Origin: Salpingoeca rosetta
Lineage: Eukaryota; Protista; Choanoflagellata
DNA: 62,523 bases
Direction of reading: 5' to 3'
Assembly (NCBI GenBank): GCA_033442325.1
Contig: JAWQFM010000004.1
Span: 1,555,895-1,618,417 of the forward strand
Of this stretch, positions 8,771-62,523 are shown piece by piece. Under the pieces are notes generated by a model, which searched no databases, had not been told where the DNA came from, and worked only from the letters and a program-made list of their open reading frames with translations. Both the position numbers and the translations under genes were made by a program. Positions within the stretch are counted from its first letter, which is position 1, and every line of letters starts with the position of its first letter.

Positions 8771-9562
8771 ATGGCGGGTGTTGTCCTTTTCAGAGCTGTC
8801 TTTGTCGTGTTCTTGGCTGTGTGCGCGTGCAGTGTTGAGGCCATCACCACACCACCAACACCAAACAGGGCCAAGCTGGCGCAAGATGACAGCGGCGCCG
8901 TGCACATCAACTCGAGTGACCCAGCGACCCAGCCCGTGTTCCTGAATGGCGTGAACGTTGTTTCGGAGATGCAAACGCTGCGTGGAACCGTGGTGGCACA
9001 ACAGAGCATGATTCAGGCGTACCAATCAACGGTGCAAGCACACCAGAGCATGATCGCAGCACAGAACAGCACGCTTCAATCCCAGCAGAGCACGATCGAT
9101 GCTCTTCGAGGCAGGGTGTGTGAGGCGACTGCCAGCACGTTCGGACAGCTTGGCTCAACAACAGCCAAATGGCGTGGCGGTGTATTGGCGAACAACGGCC
9201 TGATCTACGCGGCACCATACAACTCGCCTTCTGTGCTTATCATCGATCCCAGAACCAACACCGCTGACACAACCACGATCTCCGGACTCGGAACAGACAT
9301 CCTAAAGTGGGCGGGTGCTGTGCTGGCACACAACGGCCTCATCTACATGTTCCCAGCAAACAGGGAGACGATGCTCATTATCGACCCCGACACCAATACC
9401 GCTGACACCACAAGCATCCACTCGCTTGGCTCCGGTCAACGCAAGTGGTACAGCGGTGTGGTGGCTGACAACGGACTCATCTTTGGCATTCCATTCGCTG
9501 CGGGCTCTGTGCTGATCATTGATCCCAACACCAACACAGCCGACACCACAACTGTTGTGTGA
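8771..9562 (+). pseudogene. Secreted coiled-coil/beta-propeller family, copy A, truncated after repeat 3
   Basis: Signal peptide, QDDSGAVHINSSDPATQPVFLNG module, coiled coil, Cys and 3 repeats; similarity ends abruptly at 9552 with a stop at 9560-9562. Confidence 0.85.
9266..9552 (+). repeat. 287-bp direct repeat identical to 15063-15349
   Basis: Base-by-base comparison at offset 5797 showed no mismatch; the flanks diverge on both sides. Confidence 0.9.
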
Positions 9563-9588
9563 AATGCTGACTCAGCTTTCACACAACA
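9553..9588. repeat. 36-bp near-perfect palindrome at the truncation point of copy A
   Basis: TGTTGTGTGAAA-T-GCTGA-C-TCAGC-TTTCACACAACA. Confidence 0.9.
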
Positions 9589-9655
9589 TACCCAACCACT
9601 TGCATGCATGCAATCTTACATCAACTTGCACGCATGCAAGATGGCTGCCACGTGT

Positions 9656-14630: not shown

Positions 14631-15875
14631 ATGATGGCACCGATGAGAACGATGGGGTGCCTGCAGGCACGTGGGATGGTGCTGCTCCCCGTGCTGCTGG
14701 TGGCGGCGGCAGTGTGCTTTATGCCGCTCATCAGCAGCGTTGTTGGAGAGGTGACGCTGGTGGAGGATGATGCAGGTGCGTTTCACATCAACACGAGCGA
14801 TCCAGCGAGCCAGCCCGTGTTTGTGAACGGCGTCAACGTTCATGGGGCGCTCAGCACGCTCATGAGTACCGTGTCGGAGCAGCAGAGGGCGATTGACCGT
14901 GTCCGTGGCAAAGTGTGCACCCCAAGTGCCACGACGTTTGGCCAGCTTAGCTCAACAACATACAAATGGCTTGGTGCCGTGTTGGCCAACAACGGCCTGA
15001 TCTACGCTGCACCTCGGAACTCCCCTTCTGTACTCATCATCGACCCCAGCACCCACACACTCGACACAACCACGATCTCCGGACTCGGAACAGACATCCT
15101 AAAGTGGGCGGGTGCTGTGCTGGCACACAACGGCCTCATCTACATGTTCCCAGCAAACAGGGAGACGATGCTCATTATCGACCCCGACACCAATACCGCT
15201 GACACCACAAGCATCCACTCGCTTGGCTCCGGTCAACGCAAGTGGTACAGCGGTGTGGTGGCTGACAACGGACTCATCTTTGGCATTCCATTCGCTGCGG
15301 GCTCTGTGCTGATCATTGATCCCAACACCAACACAGCCGACACCACAACATTGGCTGGGCTGTCGAGCCAGGAATACAAATGGTATGGGGGCGTGCAAGC
15401 AGACAACGGCCTCATCTACTGCATTCCCGTGGCAGCTTCCTCTGTCCTCATCATCAATCCAGAGTCCTTCACAATGGACCTCACGACAATAAGTGGCTTT
15501 GGATCGGACCTGAAATGGTATGGGGGCGTGCTCGCAGGCAACGGCCTGATCTTCACAATCCCGTTTCATGCCACGACCACGCTCGTCATCAACCCGACCA
15601 CCAACATCGCCGAGGAGCTGCCTGTTGCCCAGGGCTCAGGCCCTTCGAAATGGACTGGCGGCGTGCTCGCACCCAACGGCAACATTGTCGGCATCCCCCT
15701 CGGAGCCTCATCGGCTCTCATCATCGATCCAAGTTCAAACACCACTGACACCACAAGTATCGACGGTCTTGCTGGATCCTACAAGTGGTTCGATGGCGTG
15801 CTCGCTGACAATGGCCTCGTCTATGGCATTCCGTTTTCGGCTGAGTCCGTCCTCGTCATCGACCCCGGGTGCTGA
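14631..15875 (+). CDS. Secreted coiled-coil/7-blade beta-propeller family, copy B (intact, intronless)
   Basis: ATG 14631, signal peptide, EVTLVEDDAGAFHINTSDPASQPVFVNG, 25-aa coil, Cys, 7 repeats, VLVIDPGC*. Confidence 0.9.
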   Translation: MMAPMRTMGCLQARGMVLLPVLLVAAAVCFMPLISSVVGEVTLVEDDAGAFHINTSDPASQPVFVNGVNVHGALSTLMSTVSEQQRAIDRVRGKVCTPSATTFGQLSSTTYKWLGAVLANNGLIYAAPRNSPSVLIIDPSTHTLDTTTISGLGTDILKWAGAVLAHNGLIYMFPANRETMLIIDPDTNTADTTSIHSLGSGQRKWYSGVVADNGLIFGIPFAAGSVLIIDPNTNTADTTTLAGLSSQEYKWYGGVQADNGLIYCIPVAASSVLIINPESFTMDLTTISGFGSDLKWYGGVLAGNGLIFTIPFHATTTLVINPTTNIAEELPVAQGSGPSKWTGGVLAPNGNIVGIPLGASSALIIDPSSNTTDTTSIDGLAGSYKWFDGVLADNGLVYGIPFSAESVLVIDPGC

Positions 15876-17170: not shown

Positions 17171-18565
17171 TCAGCAGCCGGGGTCGATGACGAGCACCGT
17201 GTCAGCATGGCTCGGGATGCCGTAGATGAGGCCGTTGTTGGCGAGCACAGCATCGTTCCACTTCCTGGATCCATCGAGGGCGTTGAGGCCTGTGATGGTT
17301 GTGGTGTCCGTGGCGTTGGTGGCGGGGTCGACAATGAGGACGGACCCCGAGTCGTGTGGAATGCCAATGATATTGCCGTTGGGCGCGAGCGCACCGCCTC
17401 GCCACTTGCGCGAGCTTGCCTCGTCAGCGACAACCAGCACATCTGTGGCGTTGGTGGCTGGATCAATGACAAGCATCGCCGCAGCCATTTCTGGGATGGC
17501 GTAGATGAGGCCGTTTGGTGCAAGCACGGCACCACGCCATTTGAAGGAGGCAGTGTCTAAACCAGCCAGTGTGGTGATGTCCGTCGTGAGGGCAACTGGA
17601 TCGACGACAAGGACATAAGCTGCCGAGTTGGGAATGCCGTAGATGAGGCCGTTGGGCGCGAGCACACCGCCATACCACTTGCTGGAGTCAGAGGGAAGGC
17701 CAGCCAAGGTCGTGGTGTCAGTGGTGTTCGTTTCTGGATCGACGATCAGCACAGACGTGGCGAAAAACGGTATGCCGAAGATGAGGCCGTTGTCCGCCAC
17801 CACACCTCCAAACCACTTGTTGTTGCCATCAACAGACGTCTCAATGCTTGTGGTGTCAGTAGTGTTGGTGTCGGGGTCGACGATGAGCAGCGTGGTTGCA
17901 AAGGACGGGAACATGTAAATGAGGCCGTTGGACGCCAAAACGGCTCCGGCCCACTTGTTCCCACTGTCCGAGAATCCAGAGATGGTGGTTGTGTCGAAGG
18001 TGTTGGTGCTTGGGTCGACGATCAACACAGATGGCGAGTTGTAGGGTGCAGCGTAGATGAGGCCGTTGTTGGCGAGAACACCGCCTATCCACAAGAACGT
18101 CAGCGTGCTGAGTTGTCCTCCGAAGATGCTTGCGTTTGCGTGGCACACCTCTGCTCGCAGAGCATCAATCCGGCCCTGCTGTGCGTCGATGGTGCTTTGC
18201 TGTGCATCGATGGCGCTTTGCAGAACAGTATTGATGCTCTCCTGTGCGTCGATGGTAATCTGCTGTGCGTCAATAGTGCTTTGCAGAACAGTATTGATGC
18301 TTTGTTGTGCGTCGAGGGTGATCTGTTGCGCAGTGACAGTCTCTAGCAACGTGCTAATTGCTGCATTGACGTTCAGGCCGTTCACGAACACGGGCTGGCT
18401 TGACGGATCGCTTGTGTTGAGGTGGAATGCGCCTGCAACGTCCTGCTCCAACACAACCTCAGCCCGGCACACGGCACAGCGCCCACCAACGGAGACAGAC
18501 ACCACCAGCAACAGCACCAGCCGTGCTGCAAGCAAAAGCGAGCACTGCTTCGCAACTCGCCTCAT
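17171..18565 (-). CDS. Secreted coiled-coil/7-blade beta-propeller family, copy C (intact, 464 aa)
   Basis: Signal peptide, module, 74-aa coil built from 21/63-nt DNA repeats, 7 repeats, IDPGC*. Confidence 0.9.
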   Translation of the reverse strand: MRRVAKQCSLLLAARLVLLLVVSVSVGGRCAVCRAEVVLEQDVAGAFHLNTSDPSSQPVFVNGLNVNAAISTLLETVTAQQITLDAQQSINTVLQSTIDAQQITIDAQESINTVLQSAIDAQQSTIDAQQGRIDALRAEVCHANASIFGGQLSTLTFLWIGGVLANNGLIYAAPYNSPSVLIVDPSTNTFDTTTISGFSDSGNKWAGAVLASNGLIYMFPSFATTLLIVDPDTNTTDTTSIETSVDGNNKWFGGVVADNGLIFGIPFFATSVLIVDPETNTTDTTTLAGLPSDSSKWYGGVLAPNGLIYGIPNSAAYVLVVDPVALTTDITTLAGLDTASFKWRGAVLAPNGLIYAIPEMAAAMLVIDPATNATDVLVVADEASSRKWRGGALAPNGNIIGIPHDSGSVLIVDPATNATDTTTITGLNALDGSRKWNDAVLANNGLIYGIPSHADTVLVIDPGC

Positions 18566-21180: not shown

Positions 21181-21253
21181 TCTGCGTTTTGGTTTTGGAA
21201 GGAAGAAGGAATGGCGCACAAACACGACGCACAAACAAAGAACCAAAACGAAG

Positions 21254-22864
<1,611 letters not shown>

Positions 22865-23609: not shown

Positions 23610-24450
23610 CAGCATCCTGGGTCGATGACAAGCACATACTCGGCGTTGGCGGGAGGAATGCAGTCGACAAGGCCATCATTCACAGCAAGCAAGCACGCCT
23701 CCTGATGCTGGTCGTTGATGTTGCCGTTTGACGCAAGCACGCCGCCAGACCACTGCACTGTAATCGCTGCATGTCGAGCTGTGTCGATCGCAGGCATCGT
23801 CGGCGTCGTCGAGTGATCTGCTGGCTGGGACATTGTAGATGAGGTCGTTGAATGCATGTGAGGTCGCCTCCCGCACCACGAGTGCCAGAGAATGTGCTTT
23901 GTGGAATGCAGCCGTTGTGGATGACGCCATTTTCAGCTGGCATGCTTCATCAGACAGCTGTGTTGGTGGTTCTTGAATCAATCGAGGATAGTGGATAGAG
24001 TGTTGCAGTCGCTGATAAGGGGCCTTGTCTTTGTCTACAGCAAGGGATGATAGTCAGCATGTAGATGAGGCCGTTTATCGCTGGAATTGTGGTCGCTGCG
24101 TCGAACAGGGGTGGATGTCAGGGATCGACGATGAGCACAGATGCACGTCCCTGCGCACAGGTCAAGCTTTTGCTGTTGTTGTTGTTGTTGTTGTTATCGG
24201 CCATTGCACCGCCACCCATGCCATGTTGCCATATCTCTGTGGTTGGCTGAGGTCACGCACGTCACGTGTCGCACGATGGTGTGTTGTGTCTATGAGGCGT
24301 CCTCACCATTGGTTGATGGGTGCTCCTGCACCATCTGTGCTCCACTGCTGCACTGGTGCAAGCACACCGTTCATGTCCACCATGCCCGTTGACTGACTTG
24401 AGTCCATCAGTGGGATGGATGGCTGGTGTTGATGTGTTGATGTGGAAGGG
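23610..24450 (-). pseudogene. Heavily degraded beta-propeller family relic, copy D
   Basis: Remnants FHINTS..VNG (~24440-24385), QWSGGVLASNGNI, NDLIYNVP and EYVLVIDPGC; many indels. Confidence 0.75.
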
Positions 24451-25059
24451 AAGGTGTCAACCTTGTGTCAACCAGAGCTGTGATCCTGCCCATCAACCGC
24501 CTCGCTCGTTTTCTCTTGCACAACACATGGTCCTGCCACCACTGTGGTGCACCTGTCTGTGTCTGTGGCAAGAGCCATCAGTGACGCAAACGAGGAAGAA
24601 GGCGAACAAGAGCACAGATGGCGTCCACATGCGTCGCAAGCAAGCGACAGAGCGAGCAACAGAGCGAGCAAGCGTTGGTGGCTGGCTTGTTGCGGCAGTG
24701 TGGAGTGTGTGCGACAACACAATAACTGTTGTGGTGTATTGTGTATTGTTGTGTTGTTTTATCTTTTTCTTTGTGCTGCAGGGCGGGAAAGTGCTTCCAA
24801 ATCGGGTGGCAGGTGTTGCCAGAAACGCAAGGATTTTCCTTCTCTGTCAACATGGCAAGCAAAAGAAGGAAGCAAACAGCGCGGTGCGTTTTGTCAATGT
24901 GAGCGCCACTGTTGATAACAAGAAGCAAAGGACAGAAAGCAAAAGGACAGAAAACAAGCAAGCACACTGCGTGGATGGTTTGGTTTGTGGATGCGATCAC
25001 AAAGAACGCCTTCCTCGCGTTCACGCAAGCCAGCCAGCAAGCAGCTCGTCGTCGTTGTG

Positions 25060-28655: not shown

Positions 28656-29915
28656 TCAACACCCTGCATCCACCACAAGGACGTCCTTCGAACTACTTGG
28701 CAGGCCATAGATGAGGCCGTTGTTGTTAGCAAGCACACCATCATACCACTTGTTGGTGCCAGCGTCCACAGCAAATGGTTCCAACAAGTTGGTTGTGTTG
28801 GTGCGTGGGTCCACGATGAGCACGCTTGACTCCATGGCGGGAATGCCAACGATGTTTCCATTTGGCGCCAGCAACCCTCCACGCCACTTGCCGTGCTCAG
28901 ATGAAAGGCCGGCGATGGAGGTCGTGTCTGTGGTGTTGGTGGCCGGGTCAATGACAAGCACCGATGTACTCTTGAAAGGGATGCCGTAGATGAGGCCATT
29001 TCTCGCACGCACGGTACCCTGCCACTTGTCGTCGCCTTCGAGCCCCGCGATGGAGGTGGTGTCGGTCGTGTTGGTGGCTGGGTCGATGATGAGCACGGAT
29101 TGGGGGTCGCGTGGAACGGAGTAGATGAGGCCGTTGTCCGCCTGCGCCCCGCCATACCACTGGCAGCAACCACTTGCAAACCCAGCCATGGTTGTGGTGT
29201 CAGTTGTCTTCATGGCCGGGTCCACAATCAACACAGATGAGGAACGCCACGGGATGCCATAGATCAAGCCGTTGTCAGCAGCCACCACGCCGCTGATCCA
29301 CTGACCAGTGCCAGCAGGGAGCCCGCTCAAAGTGATATTGTCCACGCTGTTGCTCATGGGGTCGATGATCAGAACGGACTCGGCATCGTATGGGAAGGCG
29401 TATATGAGGCCATCGTGTGCCAGCACGCCACCGCCCCATTTGCGCGCGTCTGGGGCCAAGCCAGGGATGGTCGTTGTGTCGGCGACATTGGTCGTCGGGT
29501 CGATGATGAGCACAGAAGCAGAGCGGTGTGGGATGCCGTAGATGAGGCCGTTGTTTGCCAGCACGCCACCAAGCCAGTCGGCGTCTCCTGTGCCGACGTT
29601 CGCCAGGGTGGTCATGTCTGTTGACGGCGGAAACCGGCGACAGAGGGCTTCCTGTTGCTGTTCATGCCGCTGCTGCAGCTCATCGTTGACACCCACCTGC
29701 TCCTCCAACATGCTGGCCTGTTGCTGCACCAACTTGAACATCTTTCCGACGTCCACGCCATTGACAAAGACGGGCTCCTTCTCTGGATCGCTTGTGTTGA
29801 TGTGCAGTGCACCTTCCTTATCCTCCTCCAATACCACCTCCCCGCACACGCGTGCAACGACGACCAGCACCAGCAACAGCAGGAGGGGTTGGAAGCGGGC
29901 AGCCATCATCATCAT
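28656..29915 (-). CDS. Secreted coiled-coil/7-blade beta-propeller family, copy E (intact)
   Basis: MMMMAARFQPLLLLLVLVVVARVCG signal, EEDKEGALHINTSDPEKEPVFVNG, 7 repeats, VLVVDAGC*. Confidence 0.9.
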   Translation of the reverse strand: MMMMAARFQPLLLLLVLVVVARVCGEVVLEEDKEGALHINTSDPEKEPVFVNGVDVGKMFKLVQQQASMLEEQVGVNDELQQRHEQQQEALCRRFPPSTDMTTLANVGTGDADWLGGVLANNGLIYGIPHRSASVLIIDPTTNVADTTTIPGLAPDARKWGGGVLAHDGLIYAFPYDAESVLIIDPMSNSVDNITLSGLPAGTGQWISGVVAADNGLIYGIPWRSSSVLIVDPAMKTTDTTTMAGFASGCCQWYGGAQADNGLIYSVPRDPQSVLIIDPATNTTDTTSIAGLEGDDKWQGTVRARNGLIYGIPFKSTSVLVIDPATNTTDTTSIAGLSSEHGKWRGGLLAPNGNIVGIPAMESSVLIVDPRTNTTNLLEPFAVDAGTNKWYDGVLANNNGLIYGLPSSSKDVLVVDAGC

Positions 29916-30264: not shown

Positions 30265-31216
30265 ATGAGGCGATGTCCTTCCTCTTTCGCTTGCCTTACA
30301 CTCAGCACACTCAATGCCCTCCTTGCGCTGCTGTGCATACAACACCACCATCCCCAACCACAACAACGACAACAGCAGCAGCAACAACAATACGCTGTTC
30401 GCACATGCAGCGGTGATTGAGGAGGACGAGTGGGGCACCCTGTACATCAACACCACCACAGCCAGCAACAGCAACAATAATGTCAAGCACCAACCTCGTG
30501 TGCTGGTGAATGGGGTCGATGTGGAGCAAATGCAAAGTCAGCTGCGGGAACCCGCTCGCCTCGCAGACACGTTGCAGCTTGTGCTGGCTGCTGTGGCAAG
30601 CGAGAAGAATGTCATGGCCAGTACCTTGCTGCAGGCAGCAAACCCTGGCGTGGCTGTGTCCATTGATCAAGCTGGAAACATCGACGTGGAAGGACAAGGT
30701 CTCACATCATTCTCGTTTGGGGTCATGCAAGCCATCGATGGCGACGTGAACTTGTCCAGGAACGACCTCACTTTCATCGACTTTGGCCTGCTCTCAAGCG
30801 TCGGCGGAGACATGTCGTTGCACAACAACGACCTGACTCTGTTGGATCTCAAACGCATCACCCGCGTGGGTGGCTATATCCATGCCGACAGCAACGGGCC
30901 GGTTGACATCGACTTTGGCGCACTGACGATGGTGGGCGGCTTCCTCAGCCTCCGATACAACGTCCTCACGTCGGTCGACTTTGGCAACATCGTCAGCGTG
31001 GGCGGGAATATGTACATTGCCCGCAACCCCGCCCTCTCTTCTTTTCAGTTTGGCCAGATCACCAATGTGGACGGCGACGTTCTTCTCTTCCAAACCAGCA
31101 TCACCTCTGTGAATTGCACTGGTGTCACCATATCTGGATGCATGTGTGTGGATGCAGGGGTTGAGCTCACAAACTGCCCCTCAACATGCACGGGCGAACA
31201 CTGCTCGTGTTCATAA
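30265..31216 (+). CDS. L-domain/LRR-like repeat protein carrying the propeller family's N-terminal module; signal peptide is out of frame
   Basis: VIEEDEWGTLYINTT..RVLVNGVDV, short coil, about 6 GGxxxLxxNxLTxIDFG repeats and a Cys-rich end. The leader MRRCPSSFACLTLSTLNALLALLC (ATG 30265) is one frame off from the body. Confidence 0.75.
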
Positions 31217-31546: not shown

Positions 31547-32770
31547 TTAACAGCCTGGATGAATGGTAAGGACTGAAGTTGCGTCAAGAGGCACCCCATA
31601 CACAAGGCCATTCGGTCCAACAACGCCATTGTCCCAGCGTTCACCACTCGATTCAGGGTCTGTGATGGCGATCATGCTTGAAGTGTCCACCTTCGTGTCA
31701 ACGATGAGGACGGTAGCTACATCGTGTGGGAAGCAAAACATCAGGCCATTGTTGGAGAGGACGCCGCCACTCCATTTGCCTGATTCTCCACCAAGCTCGG
31801 TGATGCTTGTTGTGTCTGCGGTGTTCGTGGCGGGGTCAATGATGAGGACTGCTGGTGAGTTGTGCGGAACTCCATAGATCTTGCCGTTATCCGCAAGCAC
31901 ACCACCAAACCACTTGTATTCATTTGGACCAAGGCTTGCAATCGTCGTTGTGTCTGTGGTGTTTGTGGATGGATCAATGATAAGAACTGCGGGAGAGTGA
32001 GATGGAATGGCGTAAATCTTGCCATTGCTCGCGAGTGTTCCACCACGCCACTTGCGTGTGCCGACCGCAATATTTGCCAGAGTTGACGTGTCCGTAGAGT
32101 TTGTGGTGGGGTCAAGGATGAGAACATTCTGAGAGTTATGAGGAATGCCATAGATTTTGCCATTGTTGGCAAGGACGCCTTCGTTCCATTTGGCTGCATC
32201 GGGTCCCAAATTTGCGATTGTCGTTGTATCTGCTGTGTTGGTGGCGGGATCCAGGATGAGAACCATCGAAGCATCCGACGGTATTCCGAAAATGAAACCG
32301 TTATCAGCAAGCACACCGCCCACCCATTTTCCACCAACGTCCGTGAGACCAGTGATGGAGGTGACGTCAACCGTCTTTGTAATGGGGTCAAGGATCAGCA
32401 CCGAAGATGAATGGGATGGTATGCCATACACAAGGCCGTTGTTGGCAAGCACACCACCTCGCCACTTATTAATGCCAAATCCTACATTCACATCCAAGTT
32501 GATTGTTGGATTCCTGTTGTTGACGCAGCAGCACGAGCGTTCAAAATACTCAAGACGTCTTTGCATTGTTGTCACAGAGGCCTCAACCCTTTGGTTCTGC
32601 TGCCCCAGCAACTCAAACATCAAACTCACATCAATGCCATTCACGAACACAGGTTGTCCGTTTGAAGCACTCAAGTGAAGCGCTCCAAGCTCATCAACAG
32701 CGAGCCGGCCCTTTCCACCACACGCCACTCGAGCTACAACCAAGAGCAACAGCGCAACAATCATTCTCAT
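31547..32770 (-). CDS. Secreted coiled-coil/7-blade beta-propeller family, copy F (intact, divergent, AT-richer codons)
   Basis: Signal peptide, VDELGALHLSASNGQPVFVNG, CCC, 7 repeats, VLTIHPGC*. Confidence 0.9.
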   Translation of the reverse strand: MRMIVALLLLVVARVACGGKGRLAVDELGALHLSASNGQPVFVNGIDVSLMFELLGQQNQRVEASVTTMQRRLEYFERSCCCVNNRNPTINLDVNVGFGINKWRGGVLANNGLVYGIPSHSSSVLILDPITKTVDVTSITGLTDVGGKWVGGVLADNGFIFGIPSDASMVLILDPATNTADTTTIANLGPDAAKWNEGVLANNGKIYGIPHNSQNVLILDPTTNSTDTSTLANIAVGTRKWRGGTLASNGKIYAIPSHSPAVLIIDPSTNTTDTTTIASLGPNEYKWFGGVLADNGKIYGVPHNSPAVLIIDPATNTADTTSITELGGESGKWSGGVLSNNGLMFCFPHDVATVLIVDTKVDTSSMIAITDPESSGERWDNGVVGPNGLVYGVPLDATSVLTIHPGC

Positions 32771-40474: not shown

Positions 40475-40508
<34 letters not shown>

Positions 40509-47259: not shown

Positions 47260-48080
47260 GTATGTGTGCAAATGCGTTTACGTGTGTTGAGCACACAAGG
47301 CTGAGCAATGCAATGCAATGCAATGCAATGCAATGGAGTGATCTCGCACACACTCACACACGCACGCACCTGTGGATGAGCAGTGTATTCTTCAGTCACG
47401 ATGCCTGCCTCCTTGACATCAGTTCAATTCACGCCCTTCTTTTGCACTGCGTGATGAAGCCGTGGTGTGGGTACAACGCAGCAAGACACCGACATCGCGT
47501 GCCGTGTGTGCTCTGTCCTTGTTGGTCCGGTCATGAGCTGATGAAGGAAGGCTGATTGAAAGTTGGATGGAAGGAAGAAATGGATGATGGATGAGATGTG
47601 TTTCAACGCGCTTCCTTCTTCCCACAACACACCAGTGAACTTGCTTGCTTGTGTGTGGCTGGAAATCCAATGCACGATTCCCAACAATCGTCCACAAGCA
47701 CAACCAGCCAAAACGCCACAAACAAACCAATCCAATCCTGTCTCCTCTTCTCTTGGTGCTGCGCCTGTCCTGCCAACACACACCACGAAGACGAACGAGG
47801 AAGGAGGAAGGCACACTTAACTTCTGCTCCTTCTCCTGTTCTACTCTTCTTCTCCTCTCCTCTTCTCTCTTCTTCACCCACTCGGAGTACGATGAAGAGA
47901 ACGATGGGGTGCCTGCAGGCACGTGGGTTGCTGGTGCTCCCCGTGCTGCTGCTGGCGGCAGTATGCTTGGTGCCGTTCATCAGCAGCGTTGCTGGAGAGG
48001 TGACGCTGGTGGAGGATGATGCGGGCGCGTTTCACATCAACACTAGCGATCCAATGAGCCAGCCCGTGTTCGTAAATGGG
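47260..48080. repeat. Third, shorter copy of the duplicated upstream block (pyruvate carboxylase first-exon relic + intergenic DNA + 5' end of propeller gene)
   Basis: Matches ~14065-14830 and ~61080-61870, including the (GCAAT)n tract and GTGTGGCTGGAAATCCAATGCA. Confidence 0.85.
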
Positions 48081-49217
48081 GTGAGCGTGGATGTGCTGTT
48101 TGGGGCAGTCTCGGCGCAACAGAGCATGATCGATGCGCACCGGAGCATGCTGCAGGAGTACCGGTCGACATTGCAGGAACAGCGTAGTGCTAACGCGGCA
48201 CAGCAGAGGGTCAACGACGCACAACAGAGTGCGATTGATGCCTTGCGAGCTAAGGTGTGCAAGGCGGCAGCTCACACGTTTGGAGACCTCCCTTCGGGGC
48301 CGGGCAAATGGAGTGGCGGCGTGCTGGCTAACAACGGGTTGATTTACGCCGCTCCATTCAATGCCCCGTCGGTCCTCATCATCGACCCAGTCACCAACGC
48401 TATCGACACAAGCACTATGGCTGAGCTTGGAACTGACATCAACAAGTGGGCTGGCGCCGTTTTGGCGAAGGATGGCCTTATCTACATGTTGGCTGCCTCA
48501 AGACCATCCCTTCTTATTGTTGACCCTGAAACAAACACTGCCGACACCACGAGTATTCAGTCGCTCGGAAGCGGTAGCCGCAAATGGTTTAGCGGGGTCC
48601 TTGCGAACAACGGTCTCATCATTGGCATCCCCAACTTTGCTACTTCCGTGCTGATCATTGATCCAGCCACAAGCACAGCGGATATCACCTCATTATCTGG
48701 ACTTTCCTCCGATGGCAACAAATGGTACAACGGTGCCCAGGCAGACAACGGTCTCATCTATTGTGTTCCAAGTGCGTCGGCTTCAATACTTGTCGTCAAC
48801 CCGGTATCGCTGTCAATGGACCTGATACCACTTGCGGTCTTGGATGTCCGATTCAGATGGCGTGGTGGTGTTCTTGCGAACAATGGCCTCATCTACTCAA
48901 TTCCGGCAAATTCTGCAACACCGCTCGTCATCGACCCAGCCACCAACGCCACCTTCACACTTGATGCTGTCAATCAGGACGGATCAGGAAGGTGGGCTGG
49001 AGGAGTGCTCAGTTCCACCGGACTGATCGTTGGCATTCCACACGACGCACCATCCGTCTTCATCTTCAATCCGGCCACCAATTCCAGCGACACCACCAGC
49101 ATCGATGATCTTGCTGGATTAGGAAAATGGCTCGGCGGCGTGCTCGCGACCAACGGCCTCATTTATGGGATCCCTCTTGTTGCTCAGAACGTCCTCGTCA
49201 TCGACCCGGGGTGCTGA
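47892..49217 (+). CDS. Secreted coiled-coil/7-blade beta-propeller family, copy G (intact)
   Basis: ATG 47892, signal peptide, module, 56-aa coil, 7 repeats, IDPGC*. Confidence 0.9.
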   Translation: MKRTMGCLQARGLLVLPVLLLAAVCLVPFISSVAGEVTLVEDDAGAFHINTSDPMSQPVFVNGVSVDVLFGAVSAQQSMIDAHRSMLQEYRSTLQEQRSANAAQQRVNDAQQSAIDALRAKVCKAAAHTFGDLPSGPGKWSGGVLANNGLIYAAPFNAPSVLIIDPVTNAIDTSTMAELGTDINKWAGAVLAKDGLIYMLAASRPSLLIVDPETNTADTTSIQSLGSGSRKWFSGVLANNGLIIGIPNFATSVLIIDPATSTADITSLSGLSSDGNKWYNGAQADNGLIYCVPSASASILVVNPVSLSMDLIPLAVLDVRFRWRGGVLANNGLIYSIPANSATPLVIDPATNATFTLDAVNQDGSGRWAGGVLSSTGLIVGIPHDAPSVFIFNPATNSSDTTSIDDLAGLGKWLGGVLATNGLIYGIPLVAQNVLVIDPGC

Positions 49218-49219
49218 CT

Positions 49220-49410
<191 letters not shown>

Positions 49411-51922: not shown

Positions 51923-53134
51923 ATGACGCCCCGCTTCTTCTTCCTCTTGTTGTTGGGAGCACTGCTGCTGGCGTTGATTGGACAGCGTTCCGGCCTTTGC
52001 ATGGGAGAGGTGACGCTGGTGGAGGATGATGTGGGCGCGTTTCACATCAACACGAGCGATCCAATGAGCCAACCCGTGTTTGTGAACGGGATGAATGTGC
52101 ACGAGACTTTGGGTATGTTGATGAGTACCGTGTCGGCGCAGCAGAGCGCGATCGATCGTGCTTATGGGAAAGTGTGCACTCCCAGCGCCAGCACATTTGG
52201 GCAACTCAGTTCAACGAGCGCAAAGTGGTTTGGGGGTGTACTGGCAAACAATGGACTGATCTACGCTGCACCATTCAACTTGCCTTCTGTACTCATCATC
52301 AACCCCAGGACCAATACCGTCGACACCACCACCATCTCGGGACTTGGAACGGATCCAGCCAAGTGGGCTGGTGGGGTGATGGCACACAACGGCCTCATCT
52401 ACATGTTCCCTTCAAACAGGGAGACCATGCTCATCATCGACCCAGACACCAATGAGGTTGACACCACGAGCATCCACTCCCTTGGTACTGGTAGCTACAA
52501 GTGGTACAGTGGTGTGGTGGCGAGGAATGGCCTCATTTTCGGCATTCCGTACTCTGCCACGTCTGTGCTGATCGTCGATCCAGAAATCAACACAGCCGAC
52601 ATCACCACGCTGTCCGGGCTGTCGAGCGAGGGATACAAGTGGTACAGCGGTGTGGAGGTGGAGAATGGTTTGATCTATTGCATTCCACGTGATGCTACAA
52701 GCATCCTCATCATCAACCCTGAGTCCTTGACGATGGACCTCACCACCATCAGTGGCCTCGGCACTGGCAAGAAGTGGTGGGGCGGCGTGCTTGCACGTAA
52801 TGGCCTCATCTACGCCATACCAGCTTTCTCTGCAACGACACTTGTCATCAACCCAGCTACAAACGCCACCAACGAGCTTCTTGTTGTAGCTGAGACATCC
52901 AGTATCAAATGGGTTGGTGGCGTGCTCGCACCCAATGGCAACATCATTGGCATCCCATTCAGCTCGCCATCCGTCCTAATTGTCGACCCAGCCGCCAACA
53001 CCACCGACACCACGACTATCGATGATCTTGCTGGATCCTACAGCTGGTGGGGTGGTGTGCTCGCCCCAAATGGTCTCGTCTACGGCATCCCTTCTTATTC
53101 CGAGTCCGTTCTCGTGATCGATCCTGGGTGCTGA
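51923..53134 (+). CDS. Secreted coiled-coil/7-blade beta-propeller family, copy I (intact)
   Basis: ATG 51923 MTPRFFFLLLLGALLL, module, 25-aa coil, 7 repeats, IDPGC*. Confidence 0.9.
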   Translation: MTPRFFFLLLLGALLLALIGQRSGLCMGEVTLVEDDVGAFHINTSDPMSQPVFVNGMNVHETLGMLMSTVSAQQSAIDRAYGKVCTPSASTFGQLSSTSAKWFGGVLANNGLIYAAPFNLPSVLIINPRTNTVDTTTISGLGTDPAKWAGGVMAHNGLIYMFPSNRETMLIIDPDTNEVDTTSIHSLGTGSYKWYSGVVARNGLIFGIPYSATSVLIVDPEINTADITTLSGLSSEGYKWYSGVEVENGLIYCIPRDATSILIINPESLTMDLTTISGLGTGKKWWGGVLARNGLIYAIPAFSATTLVINPATNATNELLVVAETSSIKWVGGVLAPNGNIIGIPFSSPSVLIVDPAANTTDTTTIDDLAGSYSWWGGVLAPNGLVYGIPSYSESVLVIDPGC

Positions 53135-56900: not shown

Positions 56901-59290
56901 GGCACCTGGCACACGTACCGCGTGGGCCGGATGTGGGCAATGGTGCGGAACGTCGACTCCGTCGTTGGGATGACCGTTTGCATTAGATCTCGGCGGCCAG
57001 CCACCATCCACACGTTGCGCTCAGTGGGCGTGCCAATCACGTCCTGTGGCGCAATGTAGCTCACCACGTCGTCCTTGCTGCGGCACACCGTGCGGCCGGC
57101 CTTGGTCAGGTAGTTGAACAGCTTGCGCTTCAGGAAGGTGACGTCCGACTCGGACATCTCCGGCACGTGCGACGTGTCAATGACCGGCAAGCCGAGCACG
57201 TGGCACAGATACTGCTTGAGCGTGTCCTGCACCGCGTTGTCAAACGCCGTCAGCTGCCGCTGCATACCCTCCACAGTCACGGGCACGCTCGAGGCGCACG
57301 CGTCCCTGTCCTCTGCGCTGGGCTTGCGCACATACACGCGGAACCTGCGGGCCAGCTCCAGCAGCTGCGAGTCCAGAAAGCGGTATTGCATGCCCGAGAC
57401 GCTGATCTTCATCTGCGACTTGATGTTGGCGCCGGCGGTGCTGTCGATGTAGCTGAGCCCACGCTCCCTGTCCTGGTCCAGGTAGTAGTACAGCGAGTAC
57501 TCCAGCAGCATGGCGCCCCGCCGTCCAGGTCGCGCGTGTGTGTCAGCACCTGCTGGGGGTGCCACGGGCGATGCGATGGGCGGGGTGCCGATGACGGGGG
57601 GGGGGGCCTCACAAATTCCACACATCCCGCACGGCCCCGTGTGCCGTGTCTGCGTAGGGCAGCAGGCCAGGCGTCGGGTAGCGGACCAGCTTGAGGCCGT
57701 AGTCGTTCAGGACGTGTTCCATGATCTTGTCGTCGCCCAGCACGCGGTCGCTGCGGGCAAACGGGTGGAAGGCGGGCGCGAGGAAGCTTGCAAGCAGCTT
57801 GGCTTGCGACCACACCAGCACGGCGGTACTGCCCGTGAAGCAGATGCGGTTGCCCATGGTTGCAGCCGCCAGCACATCAAGGTCCTTGGCCACGCTGCCC
57901 TTGTTGAATGCGTCGACGAGGTCCGACAGAAGGCCGCCCAGCTTGGGGTCGAGCACCGCCACGTGCATGTCGTTCGGGTAGCACAGCCGCGCCACAAACG
58001 TGTGCGAGACAGAGGTGGCAAACTGCATCCTGCGCACACACGCATGCGCCGCACGCGTGTCTGTCGTCTCCAGCACAAACACGCGCTGCAGCGTCGTCTC
58101 AGAGGACGCACCGCTGCTCTTGCTGTCGTCGCTGTCAGCATCGCCGTCTTTCTTGTACTGATGAGGGTCGTGCACAGCCGTGGGCTTGGCAGCAACATCG
58201 TGTGCCTCACTACCACCTTCACACTGCTGCTGTGCTCCTTGTTCTTGTTGTTGTTCAGCCATGCGCGTGTTGGCAAACGGATGGATGTGGGACTGCGTGT
58301 CCTTGAGGGACTGCGGGATGGGCACAAGCTTTGCTGTGCCGCCAAAGTTCGTCTCAACCGCCTGCACAATGTCGCGGCCCGTGGTGGGCTTGCTGTGCGG
58401 GGTGCACGTGACAACAATGCGGTGCAGCGGTGCCTGACGCGCCTCCAGACGACAGGGGCTCAACGCCGTGTCAATGGGCAGTGGCAGCAGGCTCCAGAAC
58501 GTCTCCTCGCTGTCGGCAACCACGTCCACGCTTGCACAGCGCAGGTCCGGGAAGACCTGCAGCGACTGGAAGTTGACGCCCGCGCCGCGCAGTACGTGTT
58601 GGTGGGCCAGGGCATGGCGGCAGTTAGGCCTTTTGCTGTCACGCTGCGTTGCTGCCTCGCTCAGGTAGAACGTGAAGCGCTTTACCTGGCCCGCAACAGG
58701 CGCTGGTGTGGTGGATGTTGGTGAGGCAGGGGAGGAGGACGTGGTGCCGTTGCCCTTGCTCTTCCAGTTCTTTGCCTTTTGGGTCTGGGAACACGTTGAG
58801 CTTCGTGCCCAGCACCTCTCGCTGGTCGTACAGGCGGACCATCAGCTCGGCGCTCTCCCGCGACACAAACCTGTTGTGAGGGGGAGTTGGTTGGTTGGTT
58901 GTTTGGTTGGTTGTTTGGTTGGTTGAGGACGTGGTTGAGGGAAGCGCACGCATGCTCATGCAGAATGGAGTTGGAGGAACATCTGTGCATGCACATACAC
59001 AGACACACACAGACACACACACACACCCATCGCCGACCTGAATGTGCCCCTGACGCGGTTGCCGTCCGGCCTGTATGTGTGCGAGTGAAAGCCGCCGTTT
59101 GCCTTGGCGAGCGAGGGCAGCACCTCCTCAATACCCTCGGGCACGGGCTCAACCCACACGGACCACAGCTCGTCCGCCGTCCAGGAGGGGCAGTCCGGGT
59201 CGCGGCGGGCCGTCAGCTGCACCTGCCCAAGAGGGAAGTTTGTCATCTCCCTCAGGACGCGCTCGCCAACTTCACGCGTCGCGCAGCTGC

Positions 59291-59349
<59 letters not shown>

Positions 59350-59840
59350 AGTGAGTTGAGGGTGTATCGGTGCGGGATGAAGAGAGGAACTGCACACAAA
59401 CATGATGAGTACTTGACTGCCGCATCCTCGCGCCATTACCCGCCACCACATGTCGTCATTCCCATCATGATCCTCGCATGCAACGAACACCTCCTCAACC
59501 GGTTACAATCCCCCAACATTACCGCACACCTCCAACCAGTCAGCAGCAGCTCACCTGACGCGGGCAACCTGCCCCTGATGCTCGTCCAGTGGTGTGATGC
59601 TGATGACGCCCTGCTGCTTCCCAAGGAGCGCGCGCACCAGCTCAAGCATGCCCGTGTGGTGCACAAGCACGTCAAACGGCCCAAGTGCCGCCTCATCAAC
59701 CTCTCCCTCATCCTTCTCGTCGCCATGTGCCGGTGGTGGTGCTGCTGTTGTGTATGGCTCCAGTTCGCGGCCGACTGGCGGCTGCTGGGTGAATGGCTCG
59801 TTCCGCTGCGCATGGTCGTGGGTGATGATGGGTTACGAGG
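53911..59840 (-). pseudogene. PARP14-like macro-PARP: RRM x2, KH-like region, Macro, WWE, ART catalytic domain, acidic tail; multiple frameshifts
   Basis: RRMs (PFDVLV..VARVSCATREVGERVL; LWSVWVEPVP..GTFRFVSRESAELMVRLYDQREVLGTKLNV). Macro (HVLHVVAPNF..LTTAYRALLTTARDNNIRSLATCALGCGAF). WWE (KWLY..AAWNGL..LIENAF). ART (IPDRWDM, VQRVQNVSLFKRY, RLLHGI, GLYFS, DLFVIYDNGMCYPEYIIYF). Confidence 0.8.
54238..54310. repeat. 24-bp coding tandem repeat x3 (GDDPPRDS-like) in the PARP tail
   Basis: ATCACGTGGCRGAYCATCACCAYY units. Confidence 0.8.
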
Positions 59841-61870
59841 GGTAAGAAGTGTTGAGAAGGAGAAGAATCGTGCCTTTTGGACTTTACACCGGCCACTGGT
59901 GCCCGCGTTCCAAGAGGAAACATGAGCTTCTCTAAATCCGCTCTCTCTCCCATCCTTCAATCCAACACACGCACGCAAGCGCATGTGCACCTGTATCGGG
60001 GGCAAAGTCGTTGAGCGGGTCCTTCGTGGTGATGCGCACCTGGATGCTGAATCCGCAGGTGGCAATTGCGTCCTGTTCGAACTCAATCATCTTACAGCGT
60101 CGCGCCGCCAGCAAGCATCAGCTGCGATTGCACAAGGTCAACGCCAGTCACCTGGTGGGAAGAATAAAGGAGGGAGAAGGAGAGGAAGGAGATGATGGAG
60201 GAAGTGTAAGTGAGGTGGGGGAGGAATGAAGCAGAACAGTACGCCACAAACATCAAAGTGGACAAAGCACCATCAACAGTGCTGCTTCACCGAACCACCA
60301 CAGCTCACCATCTCCGCGACTTGAATGCGCAGATTCACCTCCTTGAAGTAGTGACTGCACCACATTGCGCACGTTGGATGGTTGGTGTGAGTGTTGGGGC
60401 AGGTGCGATTATGTTTGTCAACACCAAACGAGTGCATGCACGCACCACAACACCATATCTCCACCCCCAACACCCCAACACCACACTGCTACACTGGCTC
60501 ACCGGCCATCGGATGTGTCGACAAGGACCTCGACGGTGTCGGTGTTGCGGTGGTTGAGGGAGCGGCCAAGTGCAACAGCGTCCTGAGGGCAGGAGAGGGG
60601 GGAAGGGAGAGGGAGGGAAGTAGCAGACGTGAGAGAGAGGAGAGGAACAGGGTTGAGGGACGATCACGATCACAGGTGAGGTGCGTCTGTTGTGACCGCA
60701 GCACAAGGACAGCACAAGCACAGACACACACACGCACATGCACATGAGGCAAACCTGGCAGAGGTGTTGGCGGACATCGGAGGCGCGGGGAAAGGGGCAA
60801 CCTTAACGACCCTGACAACACAAATGGTGATGCGCGTGCATGGGCATGAGGTCGGATGTAGGTGATGATGAGTGTTGTAGATCACAGCAGTGGTACGCTT
60901 CTTACAGACACACACACACACACCTTTTGCTCCTTGGCGATGCAGACAACGTCGTCGAAAGTGAGGTAGGCGGCAATGGGGGCTTTGACGGTGCACAGCA
61001 TGTACGATTCATCAGCCTTGCAACGCTGCACGGATCTGAGACGAGGAAGGAAGCGTTGCAGGCGAGTGAGTGTGTGTGTGATGTATGTGTGCGTATGCGC
61101 TTACGTGTGTTGAGCACACAAGGCTGAGCAATGCAATGCAATGCAATGTAATGGAATGACCTCACACACACTCACACACACGCACCTTTGGATGAACAGT
61201 GTATTCTTCAGTCACGATGGCTGCCTCCTTCACATGTGTTCAACTCACGCCCTTCTTCTGCACTGCGTGATGAAGCTGTGTGCTGTGTGTGCTCTGTCCT
61301 TGTAGGTCCAGTCACGAGCTGATGAAGGAAGGCTGAGGGAAGGAAGACTGAGGACATGGAAGGATGGATGGATAGATGGATGGATGCGTTTCAACGTGCT
61401 TCCTTCCCACAACAACACACACACACAACAGTGGTGTTGTGTGTGGCTGGAAATCCAATGCATGATGCCCAACAATCGTCCACAACCACAACCACAGCCA
61501 AAACGCCACAAACAAACCAATCCAATCCTGTCTCCTCTTCTCTTGGTGCTGCGCCTGTCCTGCGAACAGACACGCGAACGAGGAGGAATGAGGCACACTT
61601 AACTTCTACTTCTACTCTTCTCCTCCTCTTCTCCTCTCCTCTCTTCTTCTTCACCCACTTGGAGTATGATGGCACCGATGAGAACGATGGGGTGCCTGCA
61701 GGCAGGTGGGTTGGTGCTGCTCCCCGCGCTGCTGCTGGTGGCGGCGGCAGTGTGCTGGATGCCGTTCATAAGCAGCGTTGCTGGAGAGGTGACGCTGGTG
61801 GAGGACGATGTGGGCGCATTTCACATCAACACGAGCGATCCAGCGAGCCAGCCCGTGTTTGTGAACGGGA
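56815..61870. repeat. Segmental duplication, copy 2 (paralogue of 9820-14830)
   Basis: Colinear similarity with scattered substitutions and indels. Confidence 0.9.
59991..61275 (-). pseudogene. Pyruvate carboxylase (biotin carboxylase domain) relic exons, copy 2
   Basis: YFKEVNLRIQV, DLVQSQLML..EQDAIATCGFSIQVRITTKDPLNDFAPDT and DDVVCIAKEQ. Confidence 0.75.
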
Positions 61871-62523
61871 TGAACGTGGATGCGCTCTTTGAGACAGTGG
61901 CTGCACAGCAGAGCATGTTGCAGGTGTACCAGCAAAACGTGCAGACGCAGCAGAGCATGATTGCCATACAGCAGGACACGATCACCGCTCAGCAGGGACG
62001 AATCGACGCCCTTCGAGCCGAGGCGTGCAGCGCAAGCTCATTCACCTTCGACGATTTTGGCACTCTCGTCTTCAAATGGGCTGGCGGGGTGCTGGCGAAC
62101 AACGGCCTAATCTACGCTGCACCTTTCAGCTCAGAGTCTGTGCTTATCATTGATCCAAGCACCAACACCGCCGACACAACCACCATCTCCGAGCTGGGCA
62201 TCGACAGTGACAAATGGTCCGATGCGGTGCTGGCGCACACCGGTCTCGTCTACATGTTTCCATCACACAGAGAAACCATGCTCATCGTCGATCCCGATAC
62301 CAACACCGCCGATACCACAACCATTCAGTCCCTCGGTGTGGGAACGGGCAAGTGGTTTAGTGGTGTGGTGGCAGACAACGGCCGCATCTTCGGCGTTCCG
62401 TTTTACGCCACCTCTGTGCTGCTCATCGACGCCGCCACCAACACCGCCGACACCACCACCCTATCAGGCCTCTCCTCTGCTACCCATAAGTGGTACGGCG
62501 GCATTCAAGCAGCAAACGGCCTC
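61666..62523 (+). CDS. Secreted coiled-coil/beta-propeller family, copy J (open to the window edge; missing from the ORF track)
   Basis: Manual translation gives 286 open codons: MMAPMRTMGCLQAGGLVLL..EVTLVEDDVGAFHINTSDP..RAEACSASSFTF..KWAGGVLANNGLIYAAP. Confidence 0.9.
   Translation, partial: MMAPMRTMGCLQAGGLVLLPALLLVAAAVCWMPFISSVAGEVTLVEDDVGAFHINTSDPASQPVFVNGMNVDALFETVAAQQSMLQVYQQNVQTQQSMIAIQQDTITAQQGRIDALRAEACSASSFTFDDFGTLVFKWAGGVLANNGLIYAAPFSSESVLIIDPSTNTADTTTISELGIDSDKWSDAVLAHTGLVYMFPSHRETMLIVDPDTNTADTTTIQSLGVGTGKWFSGVVADNGRIFGVPFYATSVLLIDAATNTADTTTLSGLSSATHKWYGGIQAANGL

What the first reader, a model, noticed from the sequence alone, without database searches (positions are those of the whole stretch)
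8771..62523. Array of ten diversified secreted stalk-and-propeller genes: candidate variable recognition or adhesion system
Seen: 10 paralogues in 54 kb on both strands, sharing the layout signal - EDDxGAxHINTSDP/VFVNG module - coiled coil - Cys - 7x45-aa repeats - terminal GC*. Intact, frameshifted, truncated and relic copies coexist, a birth-and-death pattern. Framework residues (W, GGVL, NGLIY, P, VLIIDP) are conserved while residues just before W and just after P vary per blade and per copy. Inference: oligomeric, collectin/ficolin-like secreted binders with variable propeller-face loops, for microbe or glycan recognition or extracellular matrix. I do not recognise a named family with this architecture.
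Basis: partly seen in the sequence, partly recalled or inferred. Interest (0 to 1): 0.88.

Follow-up and report, generated by a model that had tools for sequence, protein, structure and literature searches.

The report
Secreted trimeric stalk-and-propeller gene family
This stretch of the choanoflagellate Salpingoeca rosetta holds ten old, diverged copies of a family of more than 100 intronless genes for secreted proteins that probably form three-stranded stalks carrying seven-bladed propeller heads with a variable top face. They are likely binding proteins, but their ligand is unknown.

Summary
Ten copies lie at 8771-62523, five on each strand. Six are intact, one is truncated and chimeric, one is frameshifted, one is a multi-frame relic, and one runs into an N block.

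The genome is Salpingoeca rosetta. The same genes occur at 108 or more places genome-wide, and the N-terminal module at 150 or more.

AlphaFold (pLDDT 91) gives a signal peptide, a beta-hairpin cap, one long helix and a seven-bladed propeller closed by an N-terminal velcro strand. The two conserved cysteines sit where a ring-closing disulfide would form; that bond is inferred. A trimer of cap plus helix scored 0.84 against 0.01 for the best control.

The propeller is a DUF6923/YVTN-type repeat. Its best fold match is virginiamycin B lyase (Z 31, 8% identity), but no catalytic-type residue is conserved.

Variation concentrates in the D-A and B-C loops on one face. Three positions per blade change as fast as or faster than synonymous sites (omega about 1.4, positions chosen post hoc). 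Whole top loops give omega 0.5.

The copies are old (dS 0.64 or more), not a recent tandem burst. The same cap and stalk also carry receptor-L-domain, cysteine-rich and mucin-like heads.

Two copies showed almost no RNA reads. Function is untested. The scan had noted this family before, on other DNA of this genome.

The parts
8771..9562 (+). c1: truncated chimeric copy with signal peptide, N-module, long stalk and blades 1-3, then a stop
   Evidence: A 287-nt run (9266-9552) is identical to c2, while the upstream part is only 80-92% identical.
14631..15875 (+). c2: intact copy, 414 aa, short stalk, ends DPGC*
17171..18565 (-). c3: intact copy, 464 aa, with the longest stalk in the window (heptad units like QQSTIDA repeated)
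23610..24500 (-). c4: relic pseudogene, with family motifs scattered over three frames
   Evidence: The HMM fragments alone are weak (E 0.005-0.013).
28656..29915 (-). c5: intact reference copy, 419 aa. Signal peptide residues 1-25 (29841-29915), N-module 26-55 (29751-29840), helix 56-94 (29634-29750), propeller 95-419 (28659-29633).
   Evidence: AlphaFold2 pLDDT 91.3, pTM 0.83. Pfam DUF6923 38.3 bits against a cut-off of 27. Trimer model.
30314..31216 (+). Divergently placed neighbour of c5 with the same N-module, but a leucine-rich 'FG.L..VGG.L.L' repeat head instead of a propeller
   Evidence: The longer genomic relative L061 matches Receptor L domain PF01030 at 3.5e-8. This gene itself had no Pfam hit.
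31547..32770 (-). c6: intact, most divergent copy, 407 aa, with three Cys at the end of the stalk
47892..49217 (+). c7: intact copy, 441 aa
50252..51513 (-). c8: copy whose reading frame breaks between 51151 and 51181, at the junction of stalk and blade 1
   Evidence: Public reads neither confirm nor refute the break.
51923..53134 (+). c9: intact copy, 403 aa, divergently placed to c8
61666..62523 (+). c10: copy read up to blade 4. It is cut by the window end and, just beyond it, by an N block of about 3.9 kb.

Best explanation
The ten genes belong to a large family of intronless genes, restricted to choanoflagellates, that encode secreted proteins.

Predicted build of each protein:
- After the signal peptide is removed, each chain starts with a roughly 30-residue beta-hairpin cap (the N-module).
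- A parallel alpha-helical coiled coil follows. Its length varies between copies, partly through repeated heptad units like AQQSxID.
- Three chains are predicted to join through cap and coil.
- Each chain ends in a seven-bladed DUF6923/YVTN-type propeller.
- The propeller ring is closed by an N-terminal strand that supplies the outer strand of blade 7. It is probably locked by a disulfide between the Cys at the end of the helix and the C-terminal Cys.

The assembled molecule would be a stalk holding three propeller heads. The framework of the blades is nearly the same in all blades and all copies. The D-A and B-C loops, which lie together on the top face around the central opening, differ from blade to blade and from copy to copy.

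The most likely job is extracellular binding, with different family members binding different partners. Candidates are bacterial or other surface glycans or proteins, or matrix components.

Shown here: gene anatomy, family size, fold, where the variation lies, and purifying selection on the framework.
Predicted by models: the trimer.
Inferred: the disulfide, secretion, binding, and the nature of the ligands.
For: Anatomy and copies.

Family size: 108 or more propeller matches and 150 or more N-module matches in the genome; both are lower bounds.

Fold: pLDDT 91.3, with hairpin 27-41, helix 56-94 and seven blades. Strand 100-104 completes blade 7.

Trimer: ipSAE 0.84 against 0.01 for the best control. 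The three runs share at least 98% of contacts, and partner pLDDT is at least 89. The tool's mark was reached by 21 of 30 proteins solved as pairs of one chain and by 0 of 23 solved as single chains, and that calibration used two copies, not three. Contacts follow an unbroken 3-4 spacing from residue 59 to 94, and strands 36-40 of one chain pair with 49-52 of the next.

Conserved residues: C92 and C419 are each conserved in 90% or more of 53 copies. All other conserved positions are repeat framework or N-module.

Variation: entropy 2.4 bits in the top loops, 1.3 in the bottom loops and 1.0 in the strands.

Selection: omega is 0.24 in the core, so the genes are under constraint. Positions W-3, W-2 and P+2 of each blade have pN 0.57 against a global pS of 0.475. 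That gives omega 1.40 (bootstrap 1.25-1.61), and 16 of 17 disjoint pairs go the same way.

Scaffold: the same cap and stalk carry other heads, namely Receptor L domain, a cysteine-rich globular head and a mucin-like tail. This marks cap plus stalk as a general presentation scaffold.

Distribution: the N-module is found in only 56 of 1.84 billion representative proteins. One of these is from Microstomoeca roanoka.
Against: - No binding, secretion or oligomer has been measured.
- Taken as whole loops, the top face gives omega 0.51, below 1.
- The three fast positions were picked after seeing the data. The Nei-Gojobori estimate is near saturation and ignores codon bias.
- Loops vary more than strands in any family.
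- c8 and c9 had next to no RNA reads in two RNA-seq runs, and most of the reads that did lie there fit only in part.
- Only the trimer was modelled, so a dimer or tetramer is not excluded.
- The best structural match is an enzyme.
Confidence: 0.6

Rival explanations
1. The proteins are secreted enzymes of the virginiamycin B lyase or lactonase type. They would break down bacterial cyclic depsipeptides, lactones or similar small molecules, and the stalk only multimerises them.
For: The best fold match is Vgb lyase 2z2n (Z 31.0, rmsd 2.6, 293 of 293 residues), clearly above the next hits at 26.5 and 25.9. Foldseek gives TM 0.86 by target. Atlas clusters of the same shape are auto-named 'Vgb family'. 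UniRef names some paralogues SMP-30/gluconolactonase-like.
Against: Identity to Vgb is 8-10%. Pfam Vgb_lyase and SGL are not among c5's hits at E up to 1. Among 53 paralogues, no His, Glu or other polar residue outside the repeat framework is conserved at 90% or more. The top face, where Vgb binds its substrate (my own knowledge), is the most variable part.
Confidence: 0.1
2. The proteins are structural parts of the extracellular matrix, theca or cell coat without specific ligands. The loop differences are only relaxed constraint in old duplicates.
For: Whole top loops give omega 0.51. The copies are old, with dS 0.64 or more. A mucin-like tail occurs on the same stalk. Many copies are decaying.
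Against: More than 100 diverged copies are kept with framework omega 0.24. That is hard to explain by bulk structure alone. Three positions per blade exceed the synonymous rate in 16 of 17 pairs. The same stalk carries binding-type heads such as the Receptor L domain.
Confidence: 0.2
3. Most copies are silent relics of a past expansion, for example of a gene acquired from bacteria or viruses. They have no present function in the cell.
For: c8 and c9 have almost no RNA reads. Relic, truncated and frameshifted copies are common. The genes are intronless. The nearest relatives outside choanoflagellates are bacterial lipoprotein-like proteins and proteins on viral contigs.
Against: Six of the ten window copies, and 53 of the fetched genomic copies, keep full open frames despite dS of 0.64 or more. 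Core omega of 0.24 shows long-term purifying selection. Only two copies and two RNA runs were sampled.
Confidence: 0.1

Closest known systems
Pfam DUF6923 / NCBIfam TIGR02276 YVTN beta-propeller repeat proteins, including spirochaete lipoprotein-like proteins and the archaeal S-layer protein 1l0q
   Same: The repeat matches both models above their cut-offs. It is a seven-bladed propeller. Identity is 21% to 1l0q and 35-47% to bacterial proteins over the propeller.
   Different: The bacterial relatives have lipoprotein-like N-termini and a conserved C-terminal PYFNKF. They lack the N-module, the coiled coil and the Cys pair. Their function is also unknown.
Virginiamycin B lyase (Vgb, PDB 2z2n)
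   Same: It is the best structural match for the whole propeller: Z 31.0, rmsd 2.6, 293 of 293 residues.
   Different: Identity is 8%. There is no Pfam Vgb_lyase hit and no conserved catalytic-type residues. Vgb is a cytoplasmic monomeric enzyme without a stalk (my own knowledge).
Collectins and ficolins (animal soluble pattern-recognition lectins)
   Same: The design is the same: secreted, a trimerising alpha-helical neck, three globular binding heads, many paralogues, and interchangeable head types on one kind of stalk.
   Different: There is no collagen Gly-X-Y region, no C-type lectin or fibrinogen-like head, and no N-terminal Cys-rich region. The head is a propeller. This is an analogy, not homology.
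Olfactomedin-family proteins (myocilin, noelins, gliomedin)
   Same: Signal peptide, N-terminal coiled coil that oligomerises, and a C-terminal beta-propeller head stabilised by a disulfide (my own knowledge of that family).
   Different: The olfactomedin propeller has five blades and its own Pfam family. None of c5's Pfam hits is that family, and c5 has seven blades.

Membership tests
DUF6923 / YVTN-type beta-propeller repeat | Match to the family profile above the curated cut-off | tested here: met
   PF21959 scores 38.3 bits against a cut-off of 27. TIGR02276 scores 30.7 against 27.85.
DUF6923 / YVTN-type beta-propeller repeat | Four-stranded blades arranged as a closed propeller | tested here: met
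   The AlphaFold2 model has seven blades, pLDDT 91.3. Fold matches: 1l0q, Z 24.0.
Virginiamycin B lyase (Vgb) | Seven-bladed propeller fold superposable on Vgb | tested here: met
   Z 31.0, rmsd 2.6, 293 of 293 residues aligned.
Virginiamycin B lyase (Vgb) | Match to the Pfam Vgb_lyase profile (PF24684) | tested here: not met
   It is not among c5's Pfam hits at E up to 1.
Virginiamycin B lyase (Vgb) | Invariant catalytic His/Glu residues and metal site on the top face | tested here: not met
   In 53 paralogues, no His or Glu in the propeller is conserved at 90% or more. All conserved positions belong to the repeat framework. A residue-by-residue superposition on Vgb could not be made with these tools.
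Collectin / ficolin | Collagen-like Gly-X-Y stalk | tested here: not met
   The stalks are heptad-patterned, Q-rich helices with no Gly-X-Y runs.
Collectin / ficolin | C-type lectin or fibrinogen-like head | tested here: not met
   The head is a DUF6923 propeller.
Collectin / ficolin | Trimerising alpha-helical neck | tested here: inconclusive
   The trimer model passes its controls, 0.84 against 0.01. It is a prediction, and other stoichiometries were not tried.
Olfactomedin family | Five-bladed OLF domain (Pfam OLF) | tested here: not met
   c5 has seven blades, and OLF is not among its Pfam hits.
SMP-30 / gluconolactonase / LRE-like (the name given to some paralogues by UniRef) | Match to Pfam SGL (PF08450) and a six-bladed propeller | tested here: not met
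   There is no SGL hit for c5 at E up to 1, and the model has seven blades.

The most novel reading that the evidence does not exclude
The family, together with the other heads carried on the same cap and stalk, is a germline-encoded recognition repertoire of the closest living relatives of animals. On this reading, more than 100 secreted trimeric binders have top-face loops under diversifying selection at about 21 positions per propeller. They would recognise surface structures of prey, symbiotic or pathogenic bacteria (or viruses), in the way collectins, ficolins or FREPs do in animals, but built from a propeller related to bacterial and viral ones.
Probability: 0.22. Interest if true: 0.85.

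Novelty: new variant of a known kind. Interest (0 to 1): 0.55.

Why it matters
Choanoflagellates are the nearest relatives of animals. They live by catching bacteria, and bacterial cues steer their multicellular and sexual life stages. How they tell bacteria apart is largely unknown.

A family of more than 100 secreted, stalked, three-headed propeller proteins with a variable face gives a concrete set of candidates for such recognition, or for matrix building. The genes are single-exon and about 1.2 kb, so they are simple to express and test. The N-terminal cap plus coiled coil is also a compact trimerisation unit with no Pfam match, and it carries several kinds of head.

If the proteins turn out to be plain structural parts or silent relics, the finding is of local interest only.

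Tried and rejected
1. **c8 frameshift against public reads.** A contig of run X8 carries an extra A behind 51170 plus 10 substitutions. Applying these gives an intact c8 frame. However, the same genome holds a 97% identical fragment at G000:C4:1459459-1459766 covering exactly that stretch. The contig therefore most likely comes from that paralogue, and the frameshift stays neither confirmed nor refuted.

2. **Site-wise selection by ancestral codon counting.** I did not reconstruct ancestors in any other way and used disjoint closest pairs instead.

3. **The cysteine-rich head on the same stalk (L056, L057, L059, L062).** By eye it reminded me of intelectin or fibrinogen-related domains. It has no Pfam hit and no PDB sequence hit. 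The AlphaFold2 model was unusable, pLDDT 36. The resemblance is unsupported and is dropped.

4. **N-module and stalk.** No Pfam family at E up to 10 apart from weak coiled-coil noise. No usable ESM Atlas feature hit.

5. **PHROGs.** No hit for c5 or for nine metagenomic, viral-looking or bacterial relatives.

6. **Origin of the propeller.** In a quick tree the backbone is unresolved. The S. rosetta and N-module-bearing environmental sequences group only at SH-aLRT 87. I claim no donor and no direction of transfer.

7. **The search for related loci with alignment A1.** It failed for lack of a conserved stretch.

8. **Read laying on 47500-53300.** The part 49420-53300 was laid instead.

9. **Literature.** No paper was found for six paralogue locus tags, for DUF6923, or for S. 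rosetta with beta-propeller and secreted, secretome, or horizontal transfer with propeller.

Full report
**Source and observation**

The window is G000:C4:1555895-1618417 of a 55.45-Mb genome. Paralogous proteins in public databases carry PTSG locus tags of Salpingoeca rosetta, so the genome is that choanoflagellate.

Five lie on each strand.
- Intact (6): c2, c3, c5, c6, c7, c9.
- c1 stops after blade 3. Its last 287 nt (9266-9552) are identical to c2, while its 5' part is much less similar, so it is a truncated chimera.
- c8 changes frame between 51151 and 51181.
- c4 is a relic whose family motifs are spread over three frames.
- c10 is cut by the window end and by an N block of about 3.9 kb just beyond it.

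The described layout is real in every element.

**Anatomy**

Each intact copy is one open frame without introns. It starts with a hydrophobic signal-like segment, which ends directly before EV.L.EDD.GA.HINTSDP..QPVFVNG.

AlphaFold2 on c5, with a 67-sequence alignment, gives mean pLDDT 91.3 and pTM 0.83. The model has:
- a beta-hairpin (27-31, 37-41) plus two short strands;
- one helix (56-94);
- seven four-stranded blades.

Strand 100-104, which comes just after the helix, supplies the fourth (outer) strand of blade 7. The other three strands of blade 7 are the last in the chain. The ring is therefore closed by a 1+3 velcro.

C92 lies eight residues before that strand. C419 is the last residue and directly follows strand C of blade 7. 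Together the two cysteines occupy the two ends of what is the C-D loop in the other six blades. Both are conserved in 90% or more of 53 genomic copies, and 42 of 53 copies end in DPGC*. A ring-closing intrachain disulfide is the natural reading. It is inferred from topology, because I had no access to model coordinates.

**Oligomer**

Three copies of c5 residues 26-96 (cap plus helix) were modelled together.
- ipSAE was 0.84, 0.85 and 0.84 in three runs; the best of three controls was 0.01.
- The runs agree in at least 98% of contacts, and partner pLDDT is at least 89.
- The tool's mark was reached by 21 of 30 proteins solved as pairs of one chain and by 0 of 23 solved as single chains. Its calibration used two copies, not three.
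- The contacts run 59, 63, 66, 70, 73, 77, 80, 84, 87, 91, 94, an unbroken 3-4 spacing.
- The core residues are M, V, Q, L, Q, N, L, H, Q, L, R. A polar-rich core fits a trimer (my own knowledge of coiled coils).
- Strands 36-40 of one chain pair with 49-52 of the next, so the N-module would form an inter-chain cap.

This supports a parallel trimer but does not show it. Dimers and tetramers were not tried.

The distance from VNG to the first W ranges from 43 to 102 residues among 53 copies. In several copies, heptad units such as QQSTIDA are visibly repeated.

**Family and distribution**

Within the genome:
- c5 finds 108 or more places (lower bound), most of them spanning nearly the whole protein in one open frame.
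- I extracted 53 full-length copies.

The window copies are 40-74% identical to one another, and their nearest relatives mostly lie elsewhere on C4 or on other contigs. Synonymous divergence is 0.64 or more for all but two genomic pairs. The cluster is therefore an assembly of old paralogues with local decay, not a recent tandem burst.

Recent events do exist:
- the identical tract shared by c1 and c2;
- a copy of c5 plus its divergent neighbour, inverted and 95.5% identical over 2,551 bp, about 225 kb away;
- near-identical truncated copies on four contigs.

Outside this genome:
- The N-module profile finds only 56 proteins among 1.84 billion representatives.
- It is present in Microstomoeca roanoka and in a few environmental eukaryote-like proteins.
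- Propeller relatives without the module occur in Salpingoeca kvevrii and Hartaetosiga gracilis.
- They also occur in bacteria, as spirochaete lipoprotein-like proteins ending in PYFNKF, and on viral contigs.
- A quick tree leaves the backbone unresolved, so I claim no donor.

**What the head is**

The repeat matches Pfam DUF6923 (38.3 bits, cut-off 27), DUF5074, and the NCBIfam YVTN repeat.

The best structural match is virginiamycin B lyase (Z 31.0, rmsd 2.6, 293 of 293 residues, 8% identity). It is followed by YncE (26.5), the leptospiral antigen Lp49 (25.9) and many generic seven-bladed propellers.

Against an enzyme reading:
- Pfam Vgb_lyase and SGL are not hit.
- All positions conserved at 90% or more are repeat framework (W, G, Y, P, aliphatics, D-P, N, D/T), the N-module or the two cysteines.
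- No His or Glu, and no blade-specific polar residue except K205, is conserved.

**Where the variation lies**

Each structural blade reads as follows:
- strand A: W.GGVL;
- strand B: LIYGIP;
- strand C: VLIID;
- strand D: .DTTTI.

The D-A loop (before W) and the B-C loop (after P) lie on the same face. This follows from propeller topology and the DSSP string.

| Region | Mean entropy (bits) | Nei-Gojobori omega, 18 disjoint closest pairs |
|---|---|---|
| D-A loop (top face) | 2.43 | 0.51 for the two top loops pooled |
| B-C loop (top face) | 2.38 | (pooled above) |
| A-B loop (bottom face) | 1.32 | 0.34 for the two bottom loops pooled |
| C-D loop (bottom face) | 1.29 | (pooled above) |
| Strands (core) | 1.03 | 0.24 |

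So the genes are under constraint, and the loops taken whole do not exceed neutrality.

I then pooled by position within the blade over the 17 of these pairs with appreciable divergence. W-3, W-2 and P+2 have dN at 1.86, 1.33 and 1.17 times the global dS. Taken together, pN is 0.567 against pS 0.475, omega is 1.40 (bootstrap over pairs 1.25-1.61), and 16 of 17 pairs go the same way.

Caveats on this result:
- The positions were chosen after seeing the data.
- The estimate is close to saturation.
- Codon bias is ignored.

I read this as a hint of diversifying change at about 21 top-face positions per propeller, not as proof.

**A shared scaffold with other heads**

The N-module and coil also precede other heads:
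- Receptor-L-domain / leucine-rich repeat heads: window 30314-31216, and the 685-aa L061 with PF01030 at 3.5e-8.
- A cysteine-rich head of about 200 residues without any match: L056, L057, L059, L062.
- A Ser/Thr-rich mucin-like tail: L055.

They support the stalk-and-head design and make cap plus coil a general presentation unit.

**Expression**

Two RNA-seq runs with raw reads were laid on 49420-53300, with about 1.6 billion letters read from each. They gave near-zero depth on c8 and c9. The few reads lie on conserved segments and fit only partly in 10 of 34 reads in one run and 19 of 21 in the other, so they probably come from paralogues.

The conditions of these runs are unknown to me. Expression of the family therefore remains open.

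**Comparison and verdict**

By membership, the head is a DUF6923/YVTN-type propeller with a Vgb-like fold. It fails the Vgb, SGL, olfactomedin and collectin/ficolin membership tests.

By design, it works like collectins, ficolins or olfactomedins: a secreted oligomeric stalk that presents several binding heads.

The family is annotated only as hypothetical proteins, and I found no paper on it. Earlier notes of this scan had already met the family on other DNA of the same genome.

I rate it a new variant of a known kind, of moderate to good interest. The architecture is well supported. The trimer and the disulfide are predicted or inferred. The binding function and its targets are inference.

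Noticed in passing
window 28000-31204 and G000:C4:1810643-1813189 (L042 844-3390): The divergent gene pair c5 plus the L-domain-headed gene is duplicated as a block, inverted, about 225 kb away. Identity is 95.5% over 2,551 bp, with a further 596 bp at 91.8%.
   Followed up: yes
window 9266-9552 versus c2: A 287-nt run is identical between c1 and c2 and ends at c1's truncation point. Upstream identity falls to 80-92%. This is a recent conversion or a chimeric duplication.
   Followed up: yes
G000:C4:1459459-1459766: This fragment is 97% identical to c8's stalk/blade-1 junction (window 51045-51354). It carries one extra base at the site where c8's frame breaks, and it explains the odd contig in run X8.
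   Followed up: partly
L043-L046 (G000 C15:1042017, C17:261813, C1:3077580, C4:939139-939773): Near-identical truncated family copies (open frames of 204-216 aa, starting MIRGLLAVFVVGALCRVCPG...) sit on four contigs. This suggests recent dispersal of a fragment, perhaps as part of a larger repeat.
   Followed up: no
L056, L057, L059 (G000 C31) and L062 (G000 C8): The N-module and a short coil are joined to a cysteine-rich head of about 200 residues. The head has no Pfam or PDB sequence match, and its AlphaFold2 model failed (pLDDT 36).
   Followed up: partly
L055 (G000:C31:590724-591563) and L061 (G000:C14:353301-355355): The same N-module and coil are joined to a Ser/Thr-rich mucin-like repeat (L055) and to a 685-aa Receptor-L-domain/LRR head (L061).
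   Followed up: partly
window 37631-40636 (+): A receptor-like gene with leucine-rich repeats (LRR_8, 2e-26), a transmembrane-like segment and a protein kinase domain split over two open frames (Pkinase, 3.6e-18 in 39950-40636).
   Followed up: partly
window 21086-23035 (+): An open frame with a signal-like start and 'FG.L..VGG.L.L' repeats like the L-domain head. It is interrupted by (CA)n/(TG)n tracts that read as HTHT and CVCV runs.
   Followed up: no
L063 6599-11693 (IMG/VR contig of 110,927 bp): Four tandem genes of 372-379 aa sit on a viral contig that also holds a Ser/Thr kinase and a fused ribonucleotide reductase. The propeller match covers at least the first two of them. This would be an array of the same propeller in a virus.
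   Followed up: partly
window 6459-6998 and 49220-49410: A 540-base N block lies inside an open frame near the window start. A (TG)95 microsatellite follows directly after the c7 stop codon.
   Followed up: no
window 33091-34546 and 53911-59840: Earlier notes of the scan place a GIY-YIG nuclease and a PARP14-like macro-PARP inside the array. The two open frames I scanned in the second region (55935-57059, 57510-58724) gave no Pfam hit at E up to 0.001.
   Followed up: no
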